DNA of 64,000 bases from positions 62,001-126,000 of the forward strand of contig NIVC01000260.1 in assembly GCA_002269645.1 (NCBI GenBank), written 5' to 3'. This document shows, in pieces, positions 1 to 50,400 of the stretch (position 1 is the first letter of the stretch; the number at the start of each line of letters is the position of its first letter). Source of the DNA: Macrostomum lignano. Its lineage: Eukaryota. Both the position numbers and the translations under genes were made by a program. Below the pieces are notes generated by a model that was given only the letters and a program-made list of their open reading frames with translations, searched no databases and had not been told where the DNA came from.

Positions 1-190
1 GCCTACAACTATTTAGGCGCCAAGCCTACAATTATCTTGGCGCTAAGCCTACAACTATTTAGGCGCCAAGCCTACAACTTTTTAGGCGCCAAGCCTACAA
101 CTATTTAGGCGCCAAGCCTACAATTATTTTGGCGCCAAGCCTACAATTATTTTGGCGCCAAAGCCACAATCAGTTTGGCGCCTAGCCCAC
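1..190. repeat. Tandem minisatellite, ~23-24 bp unit GGCGCCAAGCCTACAA(C/T)TATTT(T), truncated by the window edge
   Basis: About 8 imperfect copies read directly in 1-190. Confidence 0.9.
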
Positions 191-1076
191 AATCAAAGAG
201 GCAAGGGAAAAGGGAAAAATCTGTCAATTTGTTCACTTCCCAATAACACTGGCAACAGAGAAAAGCTGGCTCGCAAAAAGCAGTATTAAAAATCTAAAAA
301 TAACTTTCAGCAAAAACTCTACCACTGAGATTCCGAGGGTCAGTCTACTTGGCGGGTTCAGGAGGACATTGGGCATTGATTTGGTTACAGGCAGGATTAG
401 CGGAGCGGCAATGCCTGCCCCAAACAATGAGTATAAGAATAGAAGTAAATGGATCAAACCCAAACCCAAACCCATGTCCTTTTTATCGATCCAGTTCCGC
501 AGCAGGCCCCGGTTCTAAAATTCTCGTATCGATTCAGCCTGCCGTGTCTATATTTAGGTTTTGAAAGTCACGTGATCAGTCGAAGATCTGAGCCTTCGGA
601 ATGTCTGCACTAGCGCCTTTAACCAAACTCTGCTCCCGCTCGGTCATTGTTTGAGCAGAAGTGCCGCGGGCTCAGATAGTTGCCATGGCAACTCAATCAG
701 GAAAGCAGAGGCCCTATATCGATACGGCAGATTTGGGACTGGGAAAGCAGATCGATAATGTGATCGGCCAGCAGTGCACGGGGAACGGGGGGGGGGAGGG
801 AGCAGGAGACGCGCGGAAGGCCGCCCCACCGTACACAGAGAGAGAGACTCCAAAACGAACGAAACGACAAAAAAAGAAATATAGAGAGAGGGAAAGAGAA
901 AGAGAAAAAATATTTGCCAAGAAAAGTCGCCAGGAATTAAAGAAAAAAGAACTCGCTTCACTGAGAGAAGGCAGTGTGGAGCCAGAAATACTCAGAAATT
1001 TGGCTAAGTTTCCGCAGAAGACAAAAGCAATACTCAGATACAGCAAAAGTTCCTCAGCAACAGCGGCGGCAGCAGC

Positions 1077-4000
1077 ATGAACCGCAGCCTGTCAGCCTCA
1101 TCGGAGTCGCTGCTAGACGAACTGGCCACGAAGTCGCGCGTCCTGTTCGCCAACCTCGACCGCGACGGCAAAGGCTTCATCGATGCCGGCGAACTGGCCG
1201 ACTTCTGCACCGACATGTCCGAGGAGGAGTGCCAGCGCCTGTTCCGGGAGCTGGACAGGGACGGCGACGGCCGGATCAGCGTGGCCGACTTTCGCGAAGG
1301 CTTCCGCCTGATCAGCCGGACGGTGCATCAGCGCTGCGAGCATCACGAGCAGCGCCGACGCTCGTCCAACGCCTCCACCAACGGCCTGTCGCCCAAGCCG
1401 TACAGCCCGAACAGCTCCAAGGCCAACAGCATCGACGAAGTTGAAGAAGGCGGCTCGGCGTCGGCAGCTGGCGGCGGCAGGCGCTCCGGCATCAGCGACC
1501 CGGCCTCTCTGGGCGAGTGCCTGCAGAGCCTGAGCTGTCAGGACCAGGTGTTCGAGTTCTACCATCAGCTGGGTGAGGAGCGGCCCACTCTGTTGGACAA
1601 CTTCGAGACAGTCCTGGCCGAGCTCATGGCTGTTGTCAAGGCCCTGCAGACAGAGCAGCAACGCCTGGAGCAACTGCTCAGCAGCGAGCGCCAGCGACAC
1701 GCTCAAGCGATTCGCGACCTCGAAGTGGAAGTCGAGCACCAGCTGAAATCGGCTGAGCAGGCGGTCCTGTCCCGCGAACGCCAGGGCCTCGAGCAGGGCG
1801 TCCGCGACATGCTGGCCCAGCGAGATGTTGAAATCTCCAGTCTGAAGCAGCAGCTGGCCGCACTGAAGCAGCGCGCAGCCGAAGGTCGCGAGGTGGACAC
1901 GGAGACGGCAGCCTACAAGGCTGAGCTGGAGAAAATCCGCTCTGAGAAGAAGGCGCTGCAGCTGGACTTGAGCGGCGCCGAGACTCGGCTGGCCATTGTC
2001 ATGAGCGAGGTGGCCACGCTGAAGCAGGCGCTGCAGGACCGCGACCAGCAGCTGCGCAGGGAGCGGGAGTCCATGCAGGAGCAGGTGGACTGCGTGCACT
2101 GCCTCACTGCCTGTCCCTCACTCTCCCTCCCTGTCACCCTCCGACATGTCACTGTCACTGTCACCCACTCCCTCCCTGTCACCCTCTCCCTCACTGTCAC
2201 CCTCTCCCTCACTGTCACCCTCTACCTCACTGTCACCCTCTCCCTCACTTTCACCCTCTCCCTCACTGTCACCCTCTACCTCACTGTCACCCTCTCCCTC
2301 ACTTTCACCCTCTCCCTCACTGTCACCCTCTCCCTCACTGTCACCCTCCCTGTCACCCTCTCCCTCACTGTCACCCACTCCCTCACTGTCACCCTCTCCC
2401 TCACTGTCACCCTCTCCCTCACTGTCACCCTCCCTGTCACCCTCTCCCTCACTGTCACCCTCTCCCTCACTGTCACCCTCTCCCTCACTGTCACCCTCTA
2501 CCTCACTGTCACCCTCTACCTCACTTTCACCCTCTCCCTCACTGTCACCCTCTCCCTCACTGTCACCCTCCCTGTCACCCTCTCCCTCACTGTCACCCTC
2601 TCCCTCACTGTCACCCTCTCCCTCACTGTCACCCTCTCCCTCACTGTCACCCTCTCCCTCACTGTCACCCTCTCCCTCACTGTCACCCTCACTGTCACCC
2701 TCTCCCTCACTGTCACCCTCTCCCTCACTGTCACCCTCACTGTCACCCTCTCCCTCACTCTCTAAGTCTCTCCCCTCGCTCTGTTCCCGTCTTTTATTAT
2801 TTTATCTCCCCTCTCCATCCCATCAGGTAACCCCCGATAATCTAGACTCCCCGATCTCTTCCGCATCAAAAAATTGCAAAGCTGCTCACCCCCCCCCGCC
2901 CAACCGCATCGCGATCTCAGGTGCGCGAGCAGGACCGCATCACCCAGCAGCTGCACCTGCTGCACCAGACTAATCGGCAGCTCCGAGACAAGAACGAGGA
3001 GCTCCGCGAAGCCCTGGAGGCCAGTCAGGCCAGCGCTGTGCGCCTTCGCCAGCAGCAGCAGCCGGCCTCGTCCCGCCTGCTCCAGCAGAGCCACCTGGCC
3101 GAATCTGCCCTGCGAATCTGCGACCCGAACTACCCGAACAGCGGCCGCCGAATGGACAGCTGCGACTTGGACAGCGACAACCCCGACAGCGGCATGTCGA
3201 CTCTGCGCGACGTGCCCGACTTGGAGGTCGAGGACGCCGCCAACAACTGGGCAGCGGCAGCCGCCGCCGCAGCAGGGGTCTCGGCACCGCCGCCCAGATC
3301 GGCGCGCAGCAGCGGCTACTACAGCCGGCAGAGCAGCAGCAGCGCTCTGGCAGCAGGAAGAGCAACCGCCAGGCACTCCCGCCAGCTGCAGCAGCAGCCG
3401 CTGAACTCTGAATCAGAAGCTGGCGAAGATGCTGCCGAGGAGGAGCTGTACAGGCTGAGAGAGTACGACATCATTCAGCCTGAGCAGCAGCAGCAGCAGC
3501 AGCCGCATCAGGTGTCATCGCTCAGACGCTCCGTCAGCCGCCAGGTTGCTCAAAACTTCGACGAAGACGCGGACGAGCAGCCGGTCTCGATGTCGCGCCA
3601 CTCCGGCTCCCGAGCTCACCTGGGCGTGTCAACCGACTCGCTGCAGCGCAGTCAGGAGTGCCTCAGCGGGCACAGCGCCATCACCACCGTGCCCAGGAGG
3701 GACCGTCGCGGTGGCGGCGGCGCGGGAAGTCGTCGGCAGAAGCCGGAATCGAGTCCGGGACGGCAGGCGGCCGCTGGCCAAGAGGCGTCGACATCGTGCG
3801 CGATTGTCACCGTGTCGGGCAACCCGGAGCGCATGTTCAAAGTGGTGCTGGCTGGCGACGCCGCCGTCGGCAAGTCCAGCTTCATCATGAGGCTGTGCGA
3901 CAACCGGTTCACGGAGAACACCACGGCCACTCTCGGGGTGGACTTCAAGACTAAGATTATCGCCGTTGATGGGCGCGTATTTGCACTGCAGGTGGGTGCA

Positions 4001-5674
4001 CATCATCCAGGTGTACACATTCCCAACTAAATCATCATCCAGGTGTACACATTCCTAACACAATCATAAGGTGTACACATTCCCAACACAATCATAAGGT
4101 GTACACATTCCCAACACAATCATAAGGTGTACACATTCCCAACACAATCAGAAGGTGTACACATTCCCAACACAATCATAAGGTGTACACATTCCCAACA
4201 CAATCATAAGGTGTACACATTCCCAACACAATCATAAGGTGTACACATTCCCAACACAATCATAAGGTGTACACATTCCCAACACAATCATAAGGTGTAC
4301 ACGTTCCCAACACAATCATAAGGTGTACACATTCCCAACACAATCATAAGGTGTACACGTTCCCAACACAATCATAAGGTGTACACATTCCCAACACAAT
4401 CAGAAGGTGTACACATTCCCAACACAATCATAAGGTGTACACATTCCCAACACAATCATAAGGTGTACACATTCCCAACACAATCATAAGGTGTACACAT
4501 TCCCAACACAATCATAAGGTGTACACATTCCCAACACAATCAGAAGGTGTACACATTCCCAACACAATCATAAGGTGTACACATTCCCAACACAATCAGA
4601 AGGTGTACACATTCCCAACACAATCAGAAGGTGTACACATTCCCAACACAATCATAAGGTGTACACGTTGCCAACACAATCATAAGGTGTACACATTCCC
4701 AACACAATCATAAGGTGTACACATTCCCAACACAATCATAAGGTGTACACATTCCCAACACAATCATAAGGTGTACACATTCCCAACCTCTTCCAGCTGT
4801 GGGACACGGCAGGCCAGGAGCGCTTCCGGTCCGTTGCCAAGTCCTACTTCCGCCGGGCCGATGGCGTCCTGCTGCTATTCGACTGCACCTACGAGCGCTC
4901 GTTCTTGAGCGTGCGCGAATGGGTCGATCAGGTGCACGAGGCTGCGGACAAATCCGTGCCAATAATGATCTGCTCGAACAAGACGGACTTAAGACTGGCT
5001 GCCCAGCAACAGGGCAAGCGGGTAGTCGAGTATACGGAAGCAAGAAAGCTGGCGCAAGAGTACGACGCACTGTTTGCCGAGGTTAGCGCGAAGAGCGGCG
5101 AGAATGTGCAGATGTGCGTCACGGAGCTGGCCAGACTGATGCAGGCTAGCGAGGATCTGCAGGTGAGAGGCTGGACTGTCACTGTCTCTGAGTGCTACTG
5201 GACTGTCACTGTCTCTGAGTGCTACTGGACTGTCACTGTCTCTGAGTGCTACTGGACTGTCACTGTTTCTGAGTGCTACTGGACTGTCACTGTCTCTGAG
5301 TGCTACTGGACTGTCACTGTCTCTGAGTGCTACTGGACTGTCACTGTTTCTGAGTGCTACTGGACTGTCACTGTCTTGTCTTTAAGTGCTACTGGACTGT
5401 CACTGTCACTGTCTCTGAGTGCTACTGGACTGTCACTGTCTTGTCTTTGAGTGCTACTGGACTGTCACTGTCACTGTCTCTGAGTGCTACTGGACTGTCA
5501 CTGTCTCCGAGTGCTACTGGACTGTCACTTTCCCTGATCCTCTAGATCTGAAGTCAGACAGCACAATCCCCAACCATCAAACGCTTGTAGGTGAATCGCG
5601 CAAATGTCCGTCTCGGCAAAGACGATGACAAAGGAAAGAATGCAAAAGAAAAATCTGCCTGCTGCGATTTCTAG
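1077..5674 (+). CDS. RASEF: RASEF/Rab45-like large Rab GTPase (2 EF-hands + coiled coil + Rab domain), ~842 aa; exons 1077-2084, 2921-3991, 4797-5162, 5591-5674
   Basis: EF-hand loops [12 protein letters not shown] and [13 protein letters not shown]; long coiled coil; Rab motifs [15 protein letters not shown], (spliced) LQ|[19 protein letters not shown]. Last exon [27 protein letters not shown] ends in a CCxx prenylation motif. All three introns are GT-AG, phase 0, and restore the frame. Confidence 0.93.
2110..2760. repeat. Minisatellite filling RASEF intron 1, 18-bp unit TCACTGTCACCCTCTCCC
   Basis: About 35 copies; source of the artefactual (LSLTVT)n and (SLSPSP)n ORFs. Confidence 0.95.
4011..4787. 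repeat. Minisatellite filling RASEF intron 2, 28-bp unit GTGTACACATTCCCAACACAATCATAAG
   Basis: About 27 near-identical copies; the last partial copy runs directly into the acceptor (...TTCCCAACCTCTTCCAG). Confidence 0.95.
5171..5530. repeat. Minisatellite in RASEF intron 3, 27-bp unit CTGGACTGTCACTGTCTCTGAGTGCTA
   Basis: About 12 copies starting 8 nt after the donor; gives the (VTVSECYWT)n ORF. Confidence 0.95.
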
Positions 5675-16450: not shown

Positions 16451-18436
16451 ATGTCATCTGTTTCACCGGTTCCTCAGACTCCTGTGTCTAGTCTTACAAG
16501 CTTAATAATCAACACAAATATAGCTAGATTGTCTCCAGTGATGAACACTGTGACACAATCATTGCAAGGAGTTGCTCTGCCAGTGGAGCTCGACCTTGCT
16601 CCTCAAGGGATTGGAATGCCCCAAGTGTACGTGAAGCCTCAGCATCTGACGTGAGTACTTTATGCTTACTTACTAATACTATGAATCTATTACACATATA
16701 CACTAATACAAGTACATAACTCGACTATTTTTTTTTAAATTAAAACTAAAATTTATATGTTGAACAACTATACAATACAAAATTCCTTCTATTTAGTAAA
16801 AAATGAAACTTGTGAAAGAATATAAGAATAGCAAAATCAATTTTTTAGTTTAATGATGTAGGGGAGTATAGGGCTAATGGGTACTTTTGTTTTTAATTAA
16901 TGTAAGAACAAGAGAATACTAATAAATCAATAATAAAAAAATTCACAATTTAAAATGTAATTTACTAATGAAATGTAAACATGACAATGGATTGAGAAAA
17001 TTTCTCAAACCAAATTCTAGAATTGGATCATGGTTCTGTCTGGAACTGATTCTGAAAATGGAACAGACAATTTAAAAAGCTTTGAACTAATTCTGGTTCT
17101 AGACACTAAATGACACTAAGTCACTAAGTTGTGGAATTGTATCCAAGTTCCAATTTCAAGAAGATGCAATTTGGAAAATCAGTTTGCTATAACATCTCTA
17201 TTGTACAAAAAATAAACCTAGAACTTTTTATTCAGTCAAATAAGACAAGCATATACCTTTTTAATTTTAGGTTAGCTTTGTATCTCATATTTGTAAGCAT
17301 ACACACATGTTTTACAAAAGCCTTGGAATATTAGTCCTAAAATAAGGTTTCTTTTAAAGCCAATAATGGCATAGACAGGCTTTTGCATTTTTCTATTCAT
17401 GGATACAAATGATATCCAAAGTGTTTTTACTTTCCCAATGAAATTAGTCTAGTAGAATGCAAGTTTGCTCTATAAAATCTTATCCTACAAATTTCCCATT
17501 GATTTTAGTTACCTGCGCGACTTCCGCACTCAGCAGTGCCCGCTGTTTGCAAATCACAAATGCTCGCAGCACAAACCATTCACCTGCTTTCACTGGCATT
17601 TCCCAAATCAGCGGAGAAGGCGGCCACTTCGCAAGCCAGATGGCACGTTCTCATATTCGCCAGATGTGTACTGCGATAAATATGACGAGACCCGCGGCGA
17701 ATGCCCAAATGGAGATGCCTGTCCCTACCTGCATCGCAATGCTGGCGACACGGAGCGCCGCTACCATTTGCGCTATTTCAAAACTGGCACCTGCATTCAC
17801 GACACGGACACAAGGGGCCAGTGCTCGCGCAACGGTACACACTGCGCCTTTGCTCATGGCGCCACTGATCTGCGTGTGCCAGTCTATGACATTCGCGAAG
17901 TGCAAGAGGCTAGCGACTGTCCGGTGAACCTGCCGGCCAGTCTAGAGAAGGAACGAGTCCTGTCCGAAGATCCTAAATGGAACGATATGGGTTACGTGTT
18001 GGCTAATTACAAGACTGAGCCCTGCAGGAAGCCGCCAAGGATGTGCAGACAGGGTTACGCCTGTCCGTTCTATCACAACGCCAAGGATAAGAGGCGTCAA
18101 CCGCACCGGTTCAAGTATCGGTGAGTCATCAGCATTTTCTCATTAATTGCTTATTATCTCCAAAGTCTACGACGAGGATGTTATAAAGTTGTATATAAAT
18201 TTATTTTTGTTGGGTGTGTTAACTTATTGGTATATTTCATATTTGTTAGTTATGCTGTGCATATATGAAACCTTTAAAAACGTACATGTCGTTTTTTGTA
18301 CCTTGTTGAAGGGTTTTATTCGGTAAATTCTATTTTTAGCCCCGTTTTTCCTCGCTAAGTCGCCTACGTTGGCTTTATTTAGAGTTTAAAACATAAAGTA
18401 TATTTAGATTAATACTTTCTTATTAAACTTGCAACA

Positions 18437-29995: not shown

Positions 29996-30730
29996 TCAGA
30001 GCAGTTGAAACTTGACCCAGTCGGCGTTCGTCTCGATTTCCTCCTCCACCTGAGCGTCGGTGAACAGCAGCAGGCGGCAGGCTCTCAGCTTGCTGTTGTA
30101 CAGCACGTGTCTGCAGCTGGCGTCACTCATAGCGGCTGCAACGCACTCAACAGCGCTGCTCACATTCGGCACATCGGTGAAGCAGTACTCGGTGTTGTAG
30201 TTGGCTTTTTTGAACGACACCTTCTTCCAATTGGCGAGCTTCCGGTAAGCAGAGGGGTCCTTGTACTCGCAAGCGAATTCATATTTACGGTTGCAATTGA
30301 TGTCTCTGAGCAGTCCAAGTTCGTCCATCCGAATGCAGTTTTCATCAGCACCTCCTGATGGTTCGTCTGTGCCAAAGAGACTTTCAGGACTGGCGAGGCC
30401 ATTTCCGTTGACCCTCTGCCAGCCGCCTCTCTTCTCGCCTCTCTCATCAGCCAGGTCGCTCAGTCCGAGCCACAGGTCGCAGCTGCAGGATGAGCTGATG
30501 CCGCTGCGATTCAGCGCCAGGATGGAGCTGTGCGAGTTGAGCAGCTCGCCTCCGATCGATGCGCAGTGCCGATTGGCTGAGCACCAGCTGTTGCTGTGAG
30601 CTGTGCTCACGAACAGGCACAGACCGGCCTGCATGGTGAACGGTGCGGGACACGACAGGGCCTGCGACTGCGGCAGCTGAGTAACTGCAGCTAGGAGAGA
30701 ATTTGAAAACCAAAACTCGATTAGGCGCAT
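29996..30730 (-). CDS. Probably secreted C-type lectin domain protein with a C-terminal PAN/Apple-like module, 244 aa, apparently single exon
   Basis: Hydrophobic N-terminus to SQA-LS; CTLD pattern CP..F....CL...SWCSANRHC...GGEL...LWLGLSD...W...EPS...ENC...DINC...FACE; then SAVECVAAAM...CRHVLYN...CRLL. An acceptor-like CTCCTAG at 30691 could alternatively mark a separate signal-peptide exon. Confidence 0.8.
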   Translation of the reverse strand: MRLIEFWFSNSLLAAVTQLPQSQALSCPAPFTMQAGLCLFVSTAHSNSWCSANRHCASIGGELLNSHSSILALNRSGISSSCSCDLWLGLSDLADERGEKRGGWQRVNGNGLASPESLFGTDEPSGGADENCIRMDELGLLRDINCNRKYEFACEYKDPSAYRKLANWKKVSFKKANYNTEYCFTDVPNVSSAVECVAAAMSDASCRHVLYNSKLRACRLLLFTDAQVEEEIETNADWVKFQLL

Positions 30731-31400: not shown

Positions 31401-31976
31401 TCAGTCTGTGGTTGCTGCTTGAGCACCGCTGACAGACTTCTTCGAGCGGCGGCGGGCGAGACGACGCAACTCTTTCATGTCATCGGCTCGCTGCTCCTCC
31501 AGCTTCTGCAGCCGGATATGCTGCCTGAAAATTATTGAGGCACCAATATCGATAGATCGATAGATAGATAGATAGATAGTAGATAGCGAGAAAGAGCGAG
31601 CGAAGCGAGCTCTTTCGAGCTCTCTTGCCGCAGCCAATCACGCTGAAAGCAGGCACACAAGATCACCGGAAACGATTAAGGCAGCTGGAAAGCCAATGGG
31701 CGCGGTAAGCGCTTTTATCCAGAGGAACTACCTGCTGGAACCAGCCATGCCGAACGAAAATCAGACTACTCAAGTAGTGCAAAAGAGTACGTGCAACTAC
31801 CGAGAAATCTAATTTTCGTAACCGCTCCGGTGCAGGTCCTGGCTATAGATAGTAGATAGCGAGAAAGAGCGAGCGAAGCGAGCTCTTTCGAGCTCTCTTG
31901 CCGCAGCCAATCACGCTGAAAGCACGCACACAAGATCACCGGAAACGATTAAGGCAGCTGGAAAGCCAATGGGCGC

Positions 31977-32074
<98 letters not shown>

Positions 32075-35000
32075 CTCGTAGCTACTCACCTACCCAGAGC
32101 TTCATCAAGCTCTGAGTGCACTTCAGCCAGCGCATTTCTCGTATGCGACTTCAGCCCCTCAGCATCGGACCGATTTGCCTCCAGTTGACGCGACAGACTC
32201 GGGCGCGAGCGCCGAAAGTGCGTCGCCTGGAACTGCAGGAACTCGATGTACTCCTGCGGATAGTCCGACTCTCTCAGCCACCAGCGCTGCGGGAGGAATT
32301 GGTTTGGGATTGGCGGTGCACGGAATGAAACCAGAAAAAGTAGAATCGTTAAAAGATTTTCAGTTCCCCAGCAACCTTAGTCTTGGCTTCGTCGTCAACA
32401 TTCCGACTCCTCTGACGGCACTTGTAGCACTGCTGAGCCAGTTTGTAGGCGTAGTAGACAAAGGACAGCGGCGGCGGCACCAGGCCGGACCGTTTGTACT
32501 CGAGCAGCATGTGAAAATAGGATCTGCGCCAGATGCCGCGCGCTTTGCTGGACATAATGCTCACGCGTAGGTTGAATAGCGCAATGAGCAGGTTGAGCAT
32601 GACCAGGTTGCACACCAGTAGGAAGGTGTACCGAGCGAAGTGCTCAAACACCGGATATCCAGTCGGATGTGCGGCCTCGCTGCTGATTGACTGGTTGCTT
32701 ATGTCAGCCTTGGCTGCGGCCAGGTCCTGCGGGAAGTCGGTGAACAGCAGCTTCAGCGGCATAGTGTACACCTGAACGAAGACATCAACAGCGTAAGTGG
32801 CCGAGCTCGTCTCCGACGCCAGCGCTGTCACCACGGGGAACAGCAGATTGAAGAAGAACACGCCGAATGAGTACACGATGACCAGAATGATGGCCAGAAA
32901 CGGCAGCAGGTCTCGGATGAGCAGGTGCTCCAGCATGGTGATCACTGGCCCAATTAGTTCCGAATAGCTCAAGAAGGACACGGAACGAAATCCCCAGAGC
33001 AAGTAGGATGTACTTAAAATCATTTGACAGGTGTAGGCAGTTGGGTGAGTCGGATTGTCCTGGATCGCCAGCTTCCAAACGATCCCCAACCACATGAACA
33101 CCAGAGCTGAGCAGTCGAAGTAGTTGAAGATCTCTCGGAAATATTCCGGACAGCTGCAGGTCCGCTTGCAGCGCCTCGAGTGGCACTGGCGGGGGCGCAG
33201 GCTTCGGCAGAAGTCGTTGAGTTCGTGTGCAGTCAGTGACAGCGTGTACAGTAGCAGAATAATATCCGGCCAAACGTTCAGAAAGGTAGTCTTGAAGTCG
33301 ATGATGTACCAGGAAAAGTAGATTAGAAACAGGGCGAATCCGAAAAGATGGATGTAAAACTTTGCCTTCGGTGACGCCGGCTTGGTTTTGGCTTGCTCCG
33401 AGCGACCCTCCCATTCTTGTTTCACCAACTCGTACACGCAGTCGGTGGCAAACAGGTCGTTGCAGTCGGCCTCCTTGATCAGCTCGAACAGCGTCTGGTA
33501 GGTGCCAACTTCGTCAACGCTCTGGTCCGGGCGTCGAGGTGAACAACGCGCTGACTGAACGTTAGCACCAGCGCAACCTTGCGAGCCGTTAGCGAGTGAT
33601 CTGGTGGGAAACCGAGGCCCAGAGCTTACCCCGTCCGCTGTCTTAATGCCGCCTAAAATATAATTAAATAAAATTTTCTTCTGAGTTTGATCCGCATTGA
33701 CGAACAGCTCGTCCAATGCGTTCACCGCGATGCAGACGATGGCGCTGTGCAGCCGCCTCAACTGCTCGTGCCGGCCCTTCTTGCTGCTAATCTTCGGCCT
33801 CATCTGGATTAGCAGAGTAACGCAGGCGGGTATTAACTGAAACTGCCTGGTGAGGATTAGGTCTGGCAGAATTTCTAGCTTTTCAAAGTGCAAGCAGAAA
33901 TCTATGATGAGCATCTCGGATGTTTCGTCATCTTTCAGCGCGTGAATACTTAGGAATTCGTCGAGTTCCTTCTCTGAGAAGCTCTCCAGCTCAGTGTGCT
34001 GAGCTCCCAGCTTCAACTGTTCGGTGATGAAGTCTCGAAAGCAATTTTCCGTCCTAGGCGAAATCAGACCAAGCCGAAGCCCGCTGCAAAGAATCTTCGA
34101 TGAGTCCAGATGGAGCGCTCGTAGCAGAATCTTTAGATCAGTCCTGCCGCGAGTTTCTTCCCTTGCCTCTGGGCCTCTGGAATTTGCGACCGTGGTGCGG
34201 ATGTCCGCGTCCCGCTGTATCGTCACTCGCATCGATTCGTCGGAAATTGAAGCCAGCAGGTGGCGAGCTGTAGACCGGTCGGGCAGCTTCAGCGACCGGT
34301 TGGCAGGATCAACGAGTCTGAGCAGGTCGATCCGTTGAACCCCCGGCAAGCCAAATATGACACTCATCTTTCCCTTGTCGTAGCCGAAGTCGATACACGA
34401 CTGGCCGTCCTGAGTTTTCTCGGCAAGCCGCAGGCCGCACTTCATCAGGTATTGCATGTTCTCCTCGTGACCGGCTTCGCAGGCAAAGTGCAAACTCGTG
34501 GCACCTTTGTTCGGGCCCTTGGCCACAGTGAGCTGTAGCATTTCTGATAACTGCATGTCAGACAGTTCGGCCAGCGACTGGGCCAATTCCTTCAAGCTGT
34601 ACCGGCCCGCAAAGGCGTGAACGGCGTGAACACCGTCGGAATTTGTTAGAAACTTATGAAACATTTTCTTCAACTCTGCATCTGCGGCAGCTTTGCCGAG
34701 GATATCTATGAAAACGTTTGAGTCGATGATTGAGCCATGAAGGCAGGTCTGCCCCATATTGTTCTCAGCTTTCTTGTCAACTCCAGCCTTGATTACTTTG
34801 CTCAGAGTGGCGAAGAACTCGTCTGTAGACTGCGCCTGGCTGTCATTGAGGAAGACAGCGTGGGCCAAGGTGTTCTTGTCAACGTCAAGTCGTTTAAACT
34901 CTTTGGCTGCCGAGTCACCCTGAATAGTAAGGCCACCGCTATTCCAGCCAGTGCAAGCGTAAAAGAGCATATTTCTGTCTGACGAATCTACAAAGCTCAC

Positions 35001-36497
35001 AATTTTTCGGATCAACGATTTCCCTAAAAATGGCTGGCTGCTTGCATGCCTCATAGCCAGGTGCATCACCGTCTGGTCGTGCCTGTTTGTCCACAGCCAG
35101 CAGTTGGTGTCGACGAGTCTGGAAGCCGCGGCTTCAACGATTTCATGCCGCTCGCACTGAGCTGCATAGTGAAGGCAGGTGTTCCCGTCCTGATCGCGCA
35201 GTTCAACAACGGCCGCTTTGGCTTGCCCGACCAGCTGCACCGCCATTCCATTGCTGCAGTGCCGAACTGCCAGGTGCAGCACTGATTGGCCCTTCTTGTT
35301 TTGCGATCGAAGACAAGCCGCATTAGTCTCTGTCACGAGTGCGTTGATCTTCTTGTCGCAGTCGACTTTCGACAGGACCGCAAAATGAGCGCTCCGGTTC
35401 CCGTCGCTGTCAGCCTGGTTAGGTATGTCCAGTCGGGCAGCTTTCAACGCGTCCATCAGCGATTTGACAGTTTGAAATCGGCAATTCTTCAGCACAAGGT
35501 GCCACACGAGCTCGCCCCTGACGTTGCGCATTCGCAGGCACATTGGTTCGGCCACTTTAACTATTTCAGTTATTACATCATCACTGCCGTCCTTCATTGC
35601 AGCATAATGAGCGCAAGTGTTGCCGTTGATATCTCGAAGGCTAATAATATTCGAGCCGGCTATTTTAATGAGCTTCTTCGAGGTGTCTGGACTGCAGTAC
35701 TTTAATACGAGATGCAGCACAGACTCATTGAGAAAATTCTGCCAAGACAATATTTCCTGTCTGTTGAGCAGTTGAGACACCGAGTTGTCATCTGTGCCTC
35801 TCTTTGCTACGTAGTGGGCCCAGCTGTTGCCACCGTTATCTGTCAGAGCCTGGGCCGAGCCCGCCCGGTCTAGAAGCGGCTGCAGCTCAGAACCTGCCGC
35901 ATTCAGTAAGCCGACGTGCAGCACCGGCTGACCTTTGGCATTTTGCCAAGCCAAGCATTGAACTCCAACACAGTCTACTGGCACTTTGATTGCATCCTTG
36001 TGCACGATGTTCGAGGCTGCATAGTGGGGCACCGTATTGCCAAGGCTGTCCCTCTTTGCCAAATACGCGGCCGGCTTGGGTACACCGGCCAGGATCTCGC
36101 GCAGATCGTCCGCGGCTTGTCTGGCAGCGGCCAGGTGCAGCGGAGTGATGTGCGAGCAATCGGCGATCTTCAGACACCGATGGCCAGAGTGCTGAACTAT
36201 CAGCTTGAGCAGGCCTGCAGCCTGGGGGCTCAGCGCGGCATAGTGCGCCGCTGTCCGCTTGTCGGAGTCCCGCTCTAGCGACTCGTCCTGCCTGAGCTGT
36301 GCGGCCAGTTCGCTGGCAGCACTGAACTCGCCGCGCTTGGTCAGGGCCAACAGGTGACGAACATCTGAGCTGTCGTCGGTCTCGGCTACCGGCTCCGCTG
36401 GAGGGCGCCTGTCAATCAGTTTTGACAGGTCGATCACGTCAATACTGTCGCTGCCGTGATTGCCAGCCGCAGGCAGCAGCCTGCCAAACAGAGCCAT
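31401..36497 (-). CDS. TRP-family cation channel: ~17 N-terminal ankyrin repeats + TRPM-like 6-TM/TRP-box module + C-terminal coiled coil, ~1480 aa; exons 36497-32376, 32286-32090, 31524-31401
   Basis: Repeated GNT/GQSVLH ankyrin motifs (aa ~75-705); S1 SPKAKFYIHLFGFALFL, S3 NYFDCSAL, S5 RDLLPFLAIILV, S6 NLVMLNLLIALFN, TRP box GIWRRSYFHMLLEY..LVPPPL. Introns are phase 0 (AAG|GTTGCT...CCCGCAG) and phase 2 (AG|GTGAGT...TTTCAG) and keep the frame to ...AATTD*. Confidence 0.88.
31573..31976. repeat. Two 131-bp direct repeats (31573-31703, 31846-31976) separated by 142 bp, flanked by (GATA)n tracts, in channel intron 2
   Basis: The copies differ at one position (AGGCACAC vs ACGCACAC). Confidence 0.92.
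31976..32073. repeat. (GATA)n microsatellite
   Basis: About 24 perfect copies. Confidence 0.97.
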
Positions 36498-36944: not shown

Positions 36945-37765
36945 TGAGTTAGGAGAGTTGAGTGAGAGGGAGAGGGAGTAGAGTGAGAAGGGGAGTTTAG
37001 TTAGGAGAGTTGAGTGAGAGGGGAGTAGAGTGAGAGGGGAGTAAAGTGAGAGGGGGAGTAGAGTGAGAGAGGAGTAGCTAGTGAGAGGGAAGAGTGAGAG
37101 GTGAGTAGAATGAGAGGGGAGTAGTAGAGTGTGAGGGAAGTAGAGTGAGATGGAAGTAGAGTGGTAGAATAAGGTAGTAGAGTGAGAGGGAAGTATTCAT
37201 AGTAGTGAGAGGGGAGTAGAGTGAGAGGGGAGTAGCTAGTGAGAGGAGAGAGTGAGAGGGTGAGTAGAGTGAGAGGGAATAGAGTGAGAGGGGTGTAGCT
37301 AGTGAGAGAGGAGTAGAGTGAGAAGGGGAGTAGAGTGAGAGGGGGAGTAGAGTGAGAGAGGGAGCAGAATGAGAGGGGAGTAGAATGAGAGGGGAGTAGA
37401 GTGAGAGGGGAATAAATTGAGGGGAGTAGAGTGAGATTGAAGTAAAGTGGTAGAGTGAGGAGAGTATAGTGAGAGGGGAGTAGCTAGTGAGAGGGAAGAG
37501 TGAGAGGGGGAGTAGAATGAGGGGAGTAGATCAGTGAGAGGGGAATAGATTGAGGGGAGTAGAGTGAGATTGGAGTAAAGTGGTAGAGTGAGGAGAGTAG
37601 AGTGAGAGGGGAGTAGAGTGAGGAGAGTAGAGTGAGAGGGGAGTAGAGTGAGAGGGATGTAGCTAGTGAGAGGGGAGTAGAGTGAGATTGGGTGTAGAGT
37701 GAGAGTGGAGTAGAGTGAGAGGGTGAGTAGAGTGAGAGGGTGAGTAGAATGAGAGGTAGTAGGGA
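36945..37765. repeat. Purine-rich degenerate satellite, core GAGTAGAGTGAGAGGG
   Basis: More than 40 variable copies. Confidence 0.9.
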
Positions 37766-46754: not shown

Positions 46755-47342
46755 CAAGTGTACATTGGGGTGTCTGGGGCCCATGAGTGTACATTGGGGT
46801 GTCTGGGTCACGTGAGTGTACATTGGGGTGTCTGGGGCCCATGAGTGTACATTGGGGTGTCTGGGTCACGTGAGTGTACATTGGGGTGTCTGGGGCCCAT
46901 GAGTGTACATTGGGGTGTCTGGGTCACGTGAGTGTACATGGAGGTGTCTGGGTCACGTGAGTGTACATTTGGGGTGTCTGGGTCACGTGAGTGTACATTG
47001 GGGTGTCTGGGTCACGTGAGTGTACATTGGGGTGTCTGGGTCACGTGAGTGAGTGTACATTGGGGTGTCTGGGTCACGTGAGTGAGTGTACATGGGGGGT
47101 GTCTGGGTCACGCGAGTGTACATTGGGGTGTCTGGGTCACGTGAGTGTACATTGGGGTGTCTGGGTCACGTGAGTGAGTGTACATTGGGGTGTCTGGGTC
47201 ACGTGAGTGAGTGTACATGGGGGGTGTCTGGGTCACGTGAGTGAGTGTACATTGGGGTGTCTGGGTCACGCGAGTGTACATTGGGGTGTCTGGGTCACGT
47301 GAGTGTACATGGGGGTGTCTGGGTCACGTGAGTGTACATTGG
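46755..47342. repeat. ~29-bp minisatellite GTGTACATTGGGGTGTCTGGGTCACGTGA just downstream (minus sense) of the prominin donor at 47421
   Basis: About 19 copies. Confidence 0.93.
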
Positions 47343-47421
47343 GTCTAGGCCATTGTGCTTGGCGGGCTCCAGGCCGCACATCAGCAACCAGCAGGGTCCA
47401 AACAAAGAAGGCACAACGCAC

Positions 47422-50400
47422 CCGTCCTGCATGTCCGGCAGGTATTTCTGCGTCTTCCTGTACAAATTAGCCAGTTTGATAGCCAGCACAAAGCAGGGCA
47501 GCAGGCAGATGAGGCACAAGCCGAAGCCGGACCAGAATCCATTGTAGGGCCTGAGTAAGCTCACGCACGGCGCCTCGATGGCGCGGCGTATGCTGGCGCC
47601 GAGAGCGGCGCAATCGATCGAATAGGAGAGCAGAGAGTCGAGAGCGGGCAGGATGATGGAGTCCAGCAGCTGGGCAGAGGAGCCCAGGCCGCCATCCAGA
47701 GCGGACTGGTAGATCAGCGCCTGCAGCCGAGTCTCCGAGCTCAGCTCGGCGCCCAGAGAGGCCAGCCGGTCAGGCAGGGTGGCGCCGCTGGAGTTCAGAT
47801 TGGCGAACTGCTGCCGCAGCTGGGGCAGCCGGACGAGCAGGACGGAGACAGAATCGGTGACTAGGGAGGCGGCCGAGGCCAGGTCCTGGTACAGCTGGTT
47901 GAACCTGGTCGATTCGGTCGGATCCGTGGCGTTGCAGTCGCGCGAGATGTTGCTCAGAGCGGCAAGGAAGGTGCCGAGAGCGCCACCTAGAAGGGGTTTG
48001 TTCAGCTCCGCCTGCGGGTGCGGGTTCAAGGTAAAAAAACTCCGTGCTGATTATTGAATCCCAAAAATTGCACTCCCCGATCCCCTAGAAAGTCCCATTA
48101 CTGAATCCCCAAAAATATCCCACTCCTAAATCCCCCTAAAATATCCCACTCCTAAATCCTCCAAAAAATATCCCACTCCTAAATCCCCAAAAAATATCCC
48201 ACTCCTAAATCCCCCAAAAATATCCCACTCCTAAATCCCCCCAAAAACATCCCACTCCTAAATCCCCCCAAAAACATTCCACTCCTAAATCCCCCCAAAA
48301 ATATCCCACTCCGAAATCTCCTCAGAAATATCCCACTCCTAAATCCCCAGAAATATCCCATTCCTGAATCCCCAAAAATCCCATTCCCGAATCCCCAAAC
48401 ATCCCATTCCTGAATCTTCAAAAAGATCCCATTTCTGAATCCCCAAAAAGATCCCATTCCTAGACCCACAAGAAGATCCCATTCTTGAATCCCCAAAAAT
48501 ATCCCACTCCTGAATCCCCAAAAATATCCCATTCCTGAATCCCCAAAAATATCCCACTCCTGAATCCCCAAAAATATCCCATTCCTGAATCCCCAAAAAT
48601 ATCCCATTCCTGAATCCCCAAAAATATCCCATTCCTGAATCCCCAAAAGTATCTCACTCCTGAATCCCCACACACAAGTGCCACTCGTAAACGTCCAATT
48701 TCACATCTCAATAGGTTCCATAGCTCACCTCGAACTCCGTGACATTCAAAGCTGAAGCGTTGGCGGCCATGGACTGCAGCTCCTCCAGCTGGGAAATGTT
48801 GAAGGAGGCGCCGGACAGAAACTCGGAGCCCCTGCTGGCCAAGTCAGCAACGGTTCGATTCACGAACTGGTCGATCAGACCGGGCAGCCCAACTGCACCC
48901 GCCACGGCCGACATGTTGAAGGCGCTGGCCAGCGACTGTCCGTTGCAGCCGTTCAACAGGGTGCTGACGGGCTTCTGAACAACGTCCCCTAGAGACAGGT
49001 TGCCAAGGACGCCGGCGCCGCCACGGTTGTTGCTAACGGCCTGACGGGCGGCGTTGTCTAATAGGGAGTAGCCGTATTGGCCCGTGCGGCCGCTGAGGTA
49101 GCGGCAGACCTCCGTGTCTGGTGGGTAGATAGACGGGTAGATATGCTCGTAGATAGATGGTAGATAAGAGGGTAGATATGAGGGTAGATAGATGGTAGAT
49201 AGTTGGTTAGATATGTGGGTAGATAGATGGTAGATAGTTGGGTAGATATGCTAGTAGATAGATGGTAGATAAGAGGGTAGATATAAGGGTAGATAGATGG
49301 TAGATAGTTGGGTAGATATGTGGGTAGATAGATGGTAGATAGTTGGTTAGATATGTGGGTAGATAGATGGTAGATAGTTGGGTAGATATGTGGGTAGATA
49401 GATGGTAGATAGTTGGGTAGATATGTGGGTAGATATATGGTAGATAGTTGGGAAGATATGTGGGTAGATAGATGGTAGATAGTTGGGTAGATAGTTAAGT
49501 AGATATGTGGGTAGATAACTAGGTAGACAGACGGTGGATAGGTGATTATATAGGCGGGTAGATAGACGTTAAATAGGTTGGTAGGTAGACGGTAGATATG
49601 CGGGTAGATAGATTGTAGATAAGTAATTAGACAGGCGGTAGATATGTGGGTAGACAGACGGTAGATATGCGGGTAGATAGATGGTAGATAAGTAATTAGA
49701 CAGGCGGTAGATATGTGGGTAGACAGACGGTAGATATGCGGGTAGATAGATGGTAGATAAGTAATTAGACAGGCGGTAGATATGTGGGTAGACAGACGGT
49801 AGATATGCGGGTAGATAGATGGTAGATAAGTAATTAGACAGACGGTAGATATGCGGGTAGATAGATGGTAGATAAGTAATTAGACAGGCGGTAGATATGC
49901 GGATAGACAGACGGTAGATATGCGGGTAGATAGATGGTAGATAAGTAATTAGACAGACGGTAGATATGCGGGTAGATAGATGGTAGATAAGTAATTAGAC
50001 AGACGGTAGATATGCGGGTAGATAGATGGTAGATAAGTAATTAGACAGGCGGTAGATATGCGGGTAGACACAAGCAAAGTGGCCAAGCACAGTCAGCTGC
50101 ACCTACCAGCCAGGCCGCCGGTAAGGAAGAACAGAGCCGTGAGCAGCATGAGCGCGGCGTACAGCAGGCAGCCGAGCGCCACCGCGGCCAGCAGGAAGTT
50201 GGCCCCGACGCCACGGTTGCAACAGCCGGAGTCCTCGTAGGGCGGCTCGCCAGCGCAGCCGTACACCAGCCCCATGTACAGCAGCAGCACCAGCAGCAAG
50301 CCGAAGGCGGCCATGCCGATGTACAAACCGTAGCGGAACATATCGAAATTGGCGGTGAATTCCCACAGATTCTCATTCTGCCTGGTCAGCGGGTTTGGCA

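What the first reader, a model, noticed from the sequence alone, without database searches (positions are those of the whole stretch)
31401..36497. Chimeric TRP channel: long ankyrin array fused to a TRPM-type membrane module
Seen: ~17 ankyrin motifs (aa ~75-705), then a helical linker containing ...IAVNALDELF, then pre-S1 LFATDCVYELVKQEWEG, S1 SPKAKFYIHLF, S3 FNYFD, S5 RDLLPFL, S6 NLVMLNLLIALFN, TRP box IWRRSYFHMLLEY..LVPPPL and a spliced coiled-coil tail. Established: TRPM channels have an N-terminal MHR1-4 region and no ankyrin repeats; long ankyrin arrays belong to TRPA (~14-18) and TRPN (~29). TRPA S6 reads NLLIGLAVGDI and lacks the W..Y.L..EY...PPP pattern, which is TRPM/TRPS-like. Inference: the MHR1/2 region of a TRPM-lineage channel was replaced by an ankyrin array, with an MHR4-like remnant retained. 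This would be a domain-shuffled, possibly undescribed sensory channel class.
Basis: partly seen in the sequence, partly recalled or inferred. Interest (0 to 1): 0.82.

Follow-up and report, generated by a model that had tools for sequence, protein, structure and literature searches.

The report
Flatworm ankyrin-bearing TRPM-like channel gene
This is a real, intact gene of the free-living flatworm Macrostomum lignano that joins a long ankyrin-repeat arm to a TRPM-type ion-channel core; that combination is already known in parasitic flatworms (the meclonazepam target TRPM_MCLZ), so this is a divergent new subfamily, not a new channel class.

Summary
On the minus strand, three exons (36497-32376, 32286-32090, 31524-31401) encode a 1480-aa protein. 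It has 17-19 ankyrin repeats (aa ~45-715), a helical linker, a six-helix TM core with TRP helix, and a helical tail. The ankyrin-to-TM part is one uninterrupted 1382-codon ORF, so it is not an assembly join.

The TM core is TRPM-type. All 60 best PDB sequence hits and all 50 best Foldseek hits are TRPMs. No SLOG/MHR1-2 domain is present.

The same architecture is published for flatworm TRPM_MCLZ (2023-2026), whose clade was called "TRPM-like".

The window gene is not a TRPM_MCLZ orthologue. It belongs to a separate family of at least 30 clusters at 50% identity. Every member whose source was looked up is from M. lignano, except one on a marine metagenome contig. The family has a longer ankyrin array and no detectable MHR3/4 remnant.

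Profile scores, an unrooted tree split (84-94%) and a shared post-TRP motif tie this family to the other ankyrin-bearing flatworm TRPM-likes. Its rooted position among TRP families is unresolved.

Verdict: new variant of a known kind, moderate interest.

The parts
32376..36497 (-). Exon 1, codons 1-1374: N-terminal tail, ankyrin array, linker, S1-S6, TRP helix and start of the C-terminal region
   Evidence: Uninterrupted ORF 32349..36497. The donor AAG|gt at 32376/32375 was set by comparison with P0001.
34353..36365 (-). Ankyrin-repeat solenoid, aa ~45-715, 17-19 repeats
   Evidence: Pfam Ank_2/Ank/Ank_3/Ank_4/Ank_5. AF2 model with pLDDT 87.9 shows 17-19 helix pairs. Foldseek matches AnkB, ankyrin-1, NOMPC and TRPA1 arrays.
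33492..34352 (-). Helical linker, aa ~716-1002. It contains IAVNALDELF (923-932) and a disordered loop at aa ~968-997.
   Evidence: AF2 model of aa 640-1374. The C-terminal part (aa ~861 onward) aligns to the pre-S1 linker helices of TRPM-like channels, hhalign E=6e-5. No PF25508/MHR3-4 hit.
33408..33491 (-). Pre-S1 helices, aa ~1003-1030 (LFATDCVYELVKQEWEG)
   Evidence: AF2 helices. Aligned with TRPM 'FIAHTCCQVLLSDMWMG'.
32463..33371 (-). TRPM-type membrane module: S1 1043-1066, S2 1076-1098, S3 1123-1144, S4 1154-1176, S5 1183-1219, pore helix 1235-1251, S6 1280-1311, TRP helix 1312-1336, then LVPPPL
   Evidence: phmmer against PDB: all top 60 are TRPM, with TRPM3 at 1.4e-13. Foldseek: all top 50 are TRPM. 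Helix positions from the AF2 model. Residue comparison.
32287..32375 (-). Intron 1 (89 nt)
   Evidence: gt...cag boundaries; frame and sequence match P0001.
32090..32286 (-). Exon 2: WW motif and rib-helix motif FLQFQATHFRRSRP (aa 1390-1403), plus the first part of the helical tail
   Evidence: Spliced translation matches P0001. The motif is shared with other ankyrin-bearing flatworm TRPM-likes and absent from 21 canonical TRPM tails.
31525..32089 (-). Intron 2 (565 nt), with (TAGA)24, (GATA)9 and a 132-nt direct duplication
31401..31524 (-). Exon 3: charged heptad-like tail (QHIRLQKLEEQRADDMKELRRL...) and stop codon
   Evidence: Homologous tails in paralogues P0001, P0003, P0004 and P0019.

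Best explanation
What it is. This is an intact three-exon Macrostomum lignano gene for a 1480-aa subunit of a tetrameric TRP cation channel. Its parts, in order, are a 17-19-repeat ankyrin solenoid, a helical linker, a TRPM-type S1-S6 core with TRP helix, and a rib-helix/coiled-coil tail.

Where it belongs. It is a member of a strongly monophyletic, Macrostomum-expanded family. That family is most probably a fast-evolving branch of the flatworm SLOG-less, ankyrin-bearing 'TRPM-like' channels, whose characterised member is TRPM_MCLZ.

How it most likely works (inferred from the family, not shown here). Four subunits form a non-selective, probably Ca2+-permeable pore (S5, pore helix, S6 with NLLIALFN). 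Gating is coupled through the S1-S4 voltage-sensor-like cavity and the TRP helix. The conserved S2 Glu, S3 N..D, S4 Arg and TRP-helix Tyr are retained, and these positions form the ligand/Ca2+ site in TRPM8, TRPM4 and TRPM_MCLZ. The ankyrin solenoid replaces the nucleotide-binding SLOG domain as the cytoplasmic sensor or tether.

The large lineage-specific expansion suggests a diversified sensory receptor repertoire.
For: Shown here:
- One ORF spans the ankyrin array to the TM core, and the spliced tail is verified.
- The organism and the near-identical annotated genes are M. lignano.
- Family-wide architecture: ankyrin domains in 24 of 30 members, SLOG in none.
- The TM core is best matched by TRPMs in sequence and in structure, with alignments of 640-860 columns that include the linker.
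- The window-family HMM scores TRPM_MCLZ-like proteins at 114 bits and the second M. lignano ankyrin group at 110 bits. Canonical TRPM scores 82, NOMPC 64, TRPV1 39, TRPC4 23 and TRPA1 10.
- Mean distances are smallest to the MCLZ-like group.
- In an unrooted 410-column tree, all ankyrin-bearing groups separate from SLOG-bearing TRPMs with 84-94% bootstrap, and the window family plus its nearest M. lignano relatives gets 97-100%.
- The post-TRP motif [FLIVM][LVIM]x[FYVL]Q[AS]x2-3[FLI][RK] occurs in 12/14 window-family, 4/9 MCLZ-like and 4/6 second-group tails, and in 0/21 canonical TRPM tails.
- Key TM residues are conserved.

From the literature: TRPM_MCLZ is a functional cation channel with N-terminal ankyrin-like repeats and no SLOG (PMC10788528, PMC11731825, PMC12861061).
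Against: - Rooted NJ trees on 179 columns do not resolve the family's position. It groups with TRPM in 13-32% of bootstraps, outside TRPC+TRPN+TRPM in 15-17%, and with TRPA1 in 18-45%.
- On the canonical-TRPM HMM the family scores no better than NOMPC (101 vs 96 bits).
- The MHR3/4 half-domain kept by TRPM_MCLZ-type proteins is not detectable here.
- The selectivity-filter position reads F-T-D rather than the TRPM F/Y-G-Q/E.
- There is no expression or functional evidence for this gene. Ion selectivity, gating stimulus and the role of the ankyrin array are all inferred.
Confidence: 0.7

Rival explanations
1. The family is an independent, deep TRP lineage and not a derived TRPM. It would descend from the common ancestor of TRPC, TRPN and TRPM and would have kept the ancestral layout of ankyrin repeats, linker-helical domain and TM core. 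Its resemblance to TRPM would be plesiomorphic.
For: In a TRPV1-rooted NJ tree the family branches outside (TRPC4+NOMPC)+TRPM. No MHR3/4 domain is detectable. The canonical-TRPM HMM scores it about the same as NOMPC. The layout of ankyrins, linker helices, TM core and rib/pole helices is also that of TRPC and TRPN (my own knowledge of those structures).
Against: Every family member whose source was looked up is from M. lignano, except one on an unassigned marine contig. A pre-bilaterian origin would therefore need loss in nearly all animals. The basal position has only 15-17% bootstrap and the family is a long branch. HMM scores, the shared rib-helix motif and the unrooted split tie it to flatworm TRPM-like channels. 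All top PDB and Foldseek hits are TRPM.
Confidence: 0.15
2. The ankyrin array was gained independently. A Macrostomum TRPM would have lost its melastatin region and acquired ankyrin repeats separately from the TRPM_MCLZ lineage, making the architectures convergent.
For: The array is much longer than in TRPM_MCLZ-type proteins, whose Pfam ankyrin matches lie within the first ~370 residues. The linker differs, with no PF25508 remnant. A clade of all ankyrin-bearing groups gets only 10-29% bootstrap in the rooted analysis.
Against: The post-TRP motif is shared with the other ankyrin-bearing groups and absent from canonical TRPMs. The best HMM scores are to those groups. The unrooted split separates all ankyrin-bearing groups from canonical TRPMs at 84-94%.
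Confidence: 0.1
3. The gene is an assembly or annotation chimera, or a dead gene copy.
For: The two deposited models of near-identical copies are imperfect. P0002 diverges after about aa 1137, and P0001 lacks internal segments. The M. lignano gene set holds many merged or partial models.
Against: A 1382-codon ORF without a stop crosses the ankyrin-TM junction. More than 20 divergent paralogues share the architecture. A 30%-identical homologue is a single 1537-codon ORF on an independent contig. Functional residues are conserved.
Confidence: 0.03

Closest known systems
TRPM_MCLZ (Schistosoma mansoni Smp_333650) and its orthologues: the flatworm 'TRPM-like' clade
   Same: N-terminal ankyrin repeats in place of SLOG/MHR1-2, a TRPM-type S1-S6 core and TRP helix, and a helical C-terminal tail. 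Both are reported or found as three coding exons. Conserved S1 His, S2 Glu, S4 Arg and TRP-helix Tyr. Shared post-TRP FLxxQ[AS]xx[FL][RK] motif. Restricted to flatworms (PMC10788528, PMC11731825, PMC12861061).
   Different: The window gene is not an orthologue. It lacks the second S1 His and the S2 Tyr of the meclonazepam pocket. It has a much longer array, 17-19 repeats, whereas the Pfam ankyrin matches of MCLZ-type proteins lie within their first ~370 residues. It has no detectable PF25508 MHR3/4 half-domain. It forms a separate clade with 89-100% bootstrap. Its looked-up members come from a free-living flatworm, not from parasites.
Canonical TRPM channels (TRPM1-8, TRPM_PZQ)
   Same: Best sequence and structure matches for the TM core. 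S6 NLLIAxFN, TRP helix ending in EY followed by a PPP motif, and S3 N..D.
   Different: No SLOG/MHR1-2, no PF25508 domain and no TRPM_tetra Pfam hit. A long ankyrin solenoid takes their place.
TRPN / NOMPC
   Same: A long ankyrin solenoid followed by linker helices and a 6TM core. NOMPC is among the best structural matches for the array and the best non-TRPM score for the TM region (64 bits).
   Different: The TM region scores much lower than the TRPM-like groups (64 vs 110-114 bits). NOMPC has 29 repeats. The window gene's TRP helix and S6 are of TRPM type.
TRPA1
   Same: 14-18 ankyrin repeats and a C-terminal coiled coil. The fly 17-repeat TRPA1 array is a good structural match.
   Different: The TM module is the most dissimilar of all tested (10 bits on the family HMM). 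S6 and the TRP-like helix differ (sequence).
TRPS (ced-11-like, soromelastatin)
   Same: A divergent sister lineage of TRPM with a TRPM-like TM core (PMC7306681).
   Different: TRPS proteins carry SLOG and often Nudix domains, and have no ankyrin repeats (PMC7306681, PMC12980990). I did not identify labelled TRPS sequences in my trees.

Membership tests
TRPM (canonical melastatin family) | N-terminal SLOG / MHR1-2 domain (Pfam LSDAT_euk PF18139) | tested here: not met
   No hit in the window protein, in 30 family members, or by jackhmmer seeded from a canonical TRPM SLOG domain.
TRPM (canonical melastatin family) | MHR3/4 region (Pfam PF25508 'TRPM2-like domain') | tested here: inconclusive
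   No Pfam or jackhmmer hit. hhalign of aa ~620-905 gives probability 10%. Only the last linker helices, aa ~861-1034, align (E=6e-5 to TRPM-like, 0.017 to canonical). Foldseek alignments to TRPMs do span the linker.
TRPM (canonical melastatin family) | TRPM-type S1-S6 core and TRP helix | tested here: met
   All top 60 PDB sequence hits are TRPM, from 1.4e-13 to 5e-5. All top 50 Foldseek hits are TRPM. Motifs are shown.
TRPM (canonical melastatin family) | C-terminal tetramerisation coiled coil (Pfam TRPM_tetra PF16519) | tested here: inconclusive
   No Pfam hit in exon 1. The spliced tail is helical, charged and heptad-like by eye, but it was neither modelled nor scanned on its own.
TRPM (canonical melastatin family) | Phylogenetic placement inside TRPM | tested here: inconclusive
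   Rooted NJ puts it with TRPM in 13-32% of bootstraps. The unrooted 410-column tree puts it on the ankyrin-bearing side, opposite the SLOG-bearing TRPMs.
Flatworm ankyrin-bearing 'TRPM-like' channels (TRPM_MCLZ clade) | N-terminal ankyrin repeats, no SLOG, TRPM-type TM core | tested here: met
Flatworm ankyrin-bearing 'TRPM-like' channels (TRPM_MCLZ clade) | Retained C-terminal half of the MHR3/4 domain between the ankyrins and the TM core | tested here: not met
   Present in P0046, P0054, P0058, P0060, P0062, P0064, P0067, P0068, P0097 and P0098. Absent from every window-family member. Weak at best.
Flatworm ankyrin-bearing 'TRPM-like' channels (TRPM_MCLZ clade) | Meclonazepam-pocket signature: S1 HxxxH, S2 Y at +33 and E at +37, S4 R, TRP-helix Y (PMC12861061) | tested here: not met
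   The exact S1 HxxxH, Y+33, E+37 spacing is found in P0058, P0097, P0056 and both modules of P0046. The window protein keeps only the first His, the Glu, the Arg and the TRP-helix Tyr. It is therefore not a TRPM_MCLZ orthologue.
Flatworm ankyrin-bearing 'TRPM-like' channels (TRPM_MCLZ clade) | Shared derived post-TRP rib-helix motif and closest profile similarity | tested here: met
   Motif counts are 12/14, 4/9 and 4/6 in the three ankyrin-bearing groups against 0/21 canonical. HMM scores are 114 and 110 bits against 82 for canonical TRPM. The unrooted split has 84-94% support.
Flatworm ankyrin-bearing 'TRPM-like' channels (TRPM_MCLZ clade) | Forms a functional cation channel | not testable with these tools
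   Needs heterologous expression. Shown only for Sm.TRPM_MCLZ (PMC10788528).
TRPN (NOMPC) | TRPN-type TM core behind a ~29-repeat array | tested here: not met
   The TM region scores 16 bits by phmmer and 64 bits on the family HMM against 110-114 for TRPM-likes. The array has 17-19 repeats.
TRPA | TRPA-type TM core (S6 NLLIGLAVGDI) | tested here: not met
   10 bits on the family HMM. In one search TRPA1 matched through its ankyrin array only (query aa 79-419). The WIN+TRPA1 grouping at 18-45% bootstrap is probably long-branch attraction.

The most novel reading that the evidence does not exclude
The Macrostomum long-ankyrin family may not be a derived TRPM at all. It could be a separate, ancient Group-1 TRP lineage, or a surviving intermediate, that kept ankyrin repeats ahead of a TRPM-like core. 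It would then document the ancestral state before SLOG was fused onto the TRPM/TRPS stem.
Probability: 0.15. Interest if true: 0.75.

Novelty: new variant of a known kind. Interest (0 to 1): 0.4.

Why it matters
Reviews of TRP evolution state that TRPM and TRPS are the ankyrin-free families (PMC7306681). The flatworm TRPM_MCLZ work showed an exception in parasites. This gene shows that a free-living flatworm holds a second, much larger and more divergent set of SLOG-less, ankyrin-bearing TRPM-like channels, with at least 30 clusters at 50% identity and TRPA/TRPN-length arrays.

That matters in three ways:
- It widens the known range of domain replacement in the TRPM lineage.
- It offers M. lignano, a free-living laboratory flatworm, as a place to study relatives of an anthelmintic target class.
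- It points to a lineage-specific expansion of candidate sensory receptors.

It does not define a new channel class on present evidence.

Tried and rejected
- The word-indexed search with the whole protein was swamped by ankyrin proteins. With the non-ankyrin part it returned only 8 close M. lignano proteins.
- A composite bait meant to fetch TRPC, TRPN, TRPA and TRPV sequences listed only TRPV1 orthologues. Outgroup S5-TRP segments for TRPA1, TRPC4 and NOMPC were instead read from PDB alignments. Those outgroups are therefore partial, and this limited the rooted alignment to 179 columns.
- The supplementary FASTA of flatworm TRPs from PMC12861061 is not held. I could not include Sm.TRPM_MCLZ itself and identified its orthologues by the published pocket spacing instead.
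- Only distance (NJ) trees could be built. The deep placement is unresolved, and the basal or TRPA1-adjacent positions were rejected as unsupported and likely long-branch effects.
- TRPV1 failed the coverage filter in the long alignment, so that tree is unrooted.
- One regular expression for the TRP box matched nothing in any group. That was a pattern error and the row was ignored.
- Searches for an MHR3/4 remnant in aa 620-905 gave nothing convincing.
- An artefact or pseudogene reading was considered and rejected.

Full report
**1. What is in the sequence**

The minus strand carries an uninterrupted 1382-codon ORF at 32349..36497. A 90%-identical Macrostomum lignano protein (P0001) shows that the true C-terminus is spliced. 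Exon 1 ends at AAG|gt (36497-32376). Exon 2 is 32286-32090 and exon 3 is 31524-31401. Together they give a 1480-aa product with stop TGA at 31403-31401.

The organism is M. lignano. The best hits are BOX15_Mlig031396g2 (97% identity) and UniProt entries named only 'ANK_REP_REGION / Ion_trans domain-containing protein'. Flanking ORFs are ordinary metazoan genes: a C-type lectin, EF-hand and Ras/Roc ORFs, an unkempt-like zinc finger and a prominin fragment.

**2. Anatomy**

- *Ankyrin array.* Pfam finds only ankyrin families in the N-terminal half. An AlphaFold2 model of aa 1-720 (mean pLDDT 87.9) shows 17-19 consecutive helix-pair repeats between aa ~45 and ~715. Its best structural matches are AnkB (24 repeats), ankyrin-1, NOMPC, alpha-latrotoxin and the 17-repeat fly TRPA1.
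- *Linker and membrane core.* A model of aa 640-1374 (pLDDT 77.5, pTM 0.71) shows a helical linker, pre-S1 helices, S1-S6, a pore helix and a long S6-TRP helix.
- *TRPM affinity.* By sequence, all 60 best PDB matches of the TM region are TRPM-family channels, from TRPM3 at 1.4e-13 to TRPM5 at 5e-5, plus the algal TRP1. No TRPC, TRPN, TRPA or TRPV appears. By structure, all 50 best Foldseek matches are TRPMs, with alignments of 640-860 columns that therefore include the linker.
- *What is missing.* No SLOG/MHR1-2 domain is present in this protein or in any relative of its family.

**3. Not an artefact**

The ankyrin-TM junction lies inside one ORF. An exhaustive HMMER search with aa 720-1382 found 32 cluster representatives at E<1e-30. 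Ankyrin domains occur in 24 of 30 family members aligned. Every member whose source was looked up is from M. lignano, with one exception. That exception, P0029 (30% identity), is a single 1537-codon ORF filling a 5.1-kb contig mis-binned into a 'Kangiellaceae' MAG. This is independent evidence for a contiguous ankyrin-TM coding unit.

**4. Already catalogued architecture**

The second tier of hits also combines ankyrin repeats with Ion_trans, and keeps the C-terminal half of Pfam PF25508 (the TRPM MHR3/4 region) without SLOG. These proteins come from:
- M. lignano (P0054, P0062, P0064, P0067, P0068, P0098);
- the trematodes Opisthorchis and Dicrocoelium;
- the cestode Schistocephalus, where UniProt calls it 'TRPM7'.

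The literature explains them. Sm.TRPM_MCLZ (Smp_333650) is the meclonazepam-activated channel. [quoted passage not shown] It 'lacks the NH2-terminal MHR1/2 or SLOG domain' (PMC11731825). Its clade sits next to the TRPMs and 'could be referred to as TRPM-like' (PMC12861061).

The parasite proteins P0058, P0097, P0056 and both modules of P0046 show the published pocket spacing exactly: S1 HxxxH, Tyr at +33 and Glu at +37. They are therefore TRPM_MCLZ orthologues.

**5. Where the window gene sits**

It is not a TRPM_MCLZ orthologue. It keeps the first S1 His, S2 Glu, S3 N..D, S4 Arg, TRP-helix Tyr and S6 NLLIALFN, but lacks the second S1 His and the S2 Tyr.

Its family is strongly monophyletic, with 89-98% bootstrap on 179 columns and 100% on 410 columns. 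It is a long branch: mean distances to everything exceed 1.6 substitutions per site, and the smallest is to the MCLZ-like group.

*Rooted trees.* NJ trees used genuine outgroup segments: TRPV1 (P0219), TRPA1 (6wj5), TRPC4 (8wpl) and NOMPC (5vkq). They do not resolve its deep position:

| Grouping | Bootstrap |
|---|---|
| With TRPM | 13-32% |
| Outside TRPC+TRPN+TRPM | 15-17% |
| With TRPA1 | 18-45% |

*Tests less prone to long-branch attraction.* These point one way.
- The family HMM scores, in median bits: MCLZ-like 114, second M. lignano ankyrin group 110, canonical TRPM 82, NOMPC 64, TRPV1 39, TRPC4 23, TRPA1 10.
- An unrooted 410-column tree separates all ankyrin-bearing groups from SLOG-bearing TRPMs at 84-94%.
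- A post-TRP rib-helix motif (FLxFQAxxFR in this family, FLLYQAFSLR and FxLVQSFALK in the others) occurs in 12/14, 4/6 and 4/9 tails of the three ankyrin-bearing groups, and in 0/21 canonical TRPM tails.

*Caveat.* On the canonical-TRPM HMM the family (101 bits) is not clearly better than NOMPC (96 bits).

*MHR remnant.* The 'MHR4-like remnant' is weak here. Only aa ~861-1034 (IAVNALDELF ... LFATDCVYELVKQEWEG) align to the TRPM-like pre-S1 linker helices (hhalign E=6e-5; 0.017 against canonical). Nothing convincing was found further upstream.

**6. Mechanism (inferred)**

By homology with TRPM channels and TRPM_MCLZ, the protein should form a tetrameric cation channel. Gating would be coupled through the S1-S4 cavity and the TRP helix, whose key residues are kept. 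The ankyrin solenoid would replace SLOG as the cytoplasmic regulatory, ligand-binding or tethering module. The filter position reads F-T-D where TRPMs have F/Y-G-Q/E, so selectivity cannot be predicted. The size of the expansion suggests sensory diversification. None of this was tested.

**7. Novelty and verdict**

I found no paper describing this Macrostomum family. Work on TRPM_MCLZ covers parasites only. Planarian and mollusc surveys report MHR/SLOG-bearing TRPMs. Evolutionary reviews still call TRPM and TRPS ankyrin-free.

The gene is best described as a new, divergent variant of a known kind, the flatworm ankyrin-bearing TRPM-like channels. It has a TRPA/TRPN-length array and a more degenerate linker. 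The reading that it is a separate ancient TRP lineage is not excluded (about 0.15), but it is disfavoured by the flatworm-restricted distribution and the shared derived motif.

Noticed in passing
window 31525-32089 (intron 2): A (TAGA)24.5 microsatellite at 31977-32074, (GATA)9 at 31551-31586, and a 132-nt direct duplication (99% identical) at 31572-31703 and 31845-31976. It looks like a duplicated unit made of a unique segment plus a microsatellite.
   Followed up: partly
window 36953-37756: An ~800-bp purine-rich minisatellite (16-nt unit GAGTAGAGTGAGAGGG, ~48 copies) about 460 bp upstream of the channel's start codon. It explains the strong GC skew of 36-38 kb.
   Followed up: partly
window 29996-30730 (-): A 244-aa ORF with a C-type lectin domain (Pfam Lectin_C, E=4e-6) about 670 bp downstream of the channel's stop codon, on the same strand.
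   Followed up: partly
window 1077-4030 (+), 17465-18124 (+), 47295-48029 (-): Other gene fragments: an EF-hand ORF followed by a Ras/Roc GTPase ORF (possibly one EF-hand Rab-like gene), an unkempt-like CCCH zinc-finger exon, and a prominin C-terminal fragment.
   Followed up: no
P0046 (Opisthorchis viverrini T265_12782, 1906 aa): This protein contains two complete TRPM_MCLZ-type membrane modules, with S1 HxxxH at aa 695 and aa 1374. It is probably a gene model that reads through the duplicated alternative exon 3a/3b reported for trematode TRPM_MCLZ (PMC12861061), or two tandem genes merged.
   Followed up: partly
L001 (JAZBNS010000602.1 of GCA_036350755.1), 42-4655: A family member (P0029, 1537 aa, 30% identical) fills a 5.1-kb contig assigned to a 'Kangiellaceae bacterium' MAG. 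This is animal, probably flatworm, DNA contaminating a bacterial bin.
   Followed up: partly
P0021, P0209, P0210 (M. lignano gene models): Among the 30 aligned family members, one carries STIM1 EF-hand and SOAR Pfam hits. P0021, named 'EF-hand domain-containing' in UniProt, is the likely one, but this was not checked. P0209 and P0210 (2903-3003 aa) each carry two channel modules (P0210 confirmed in the alignment, P0209 from the hit count), and UniProt names P0209 'Integrase catalytic domain-containing'. These are probably merged neighbouring genes in the automatic annotation.
   Followed up: no
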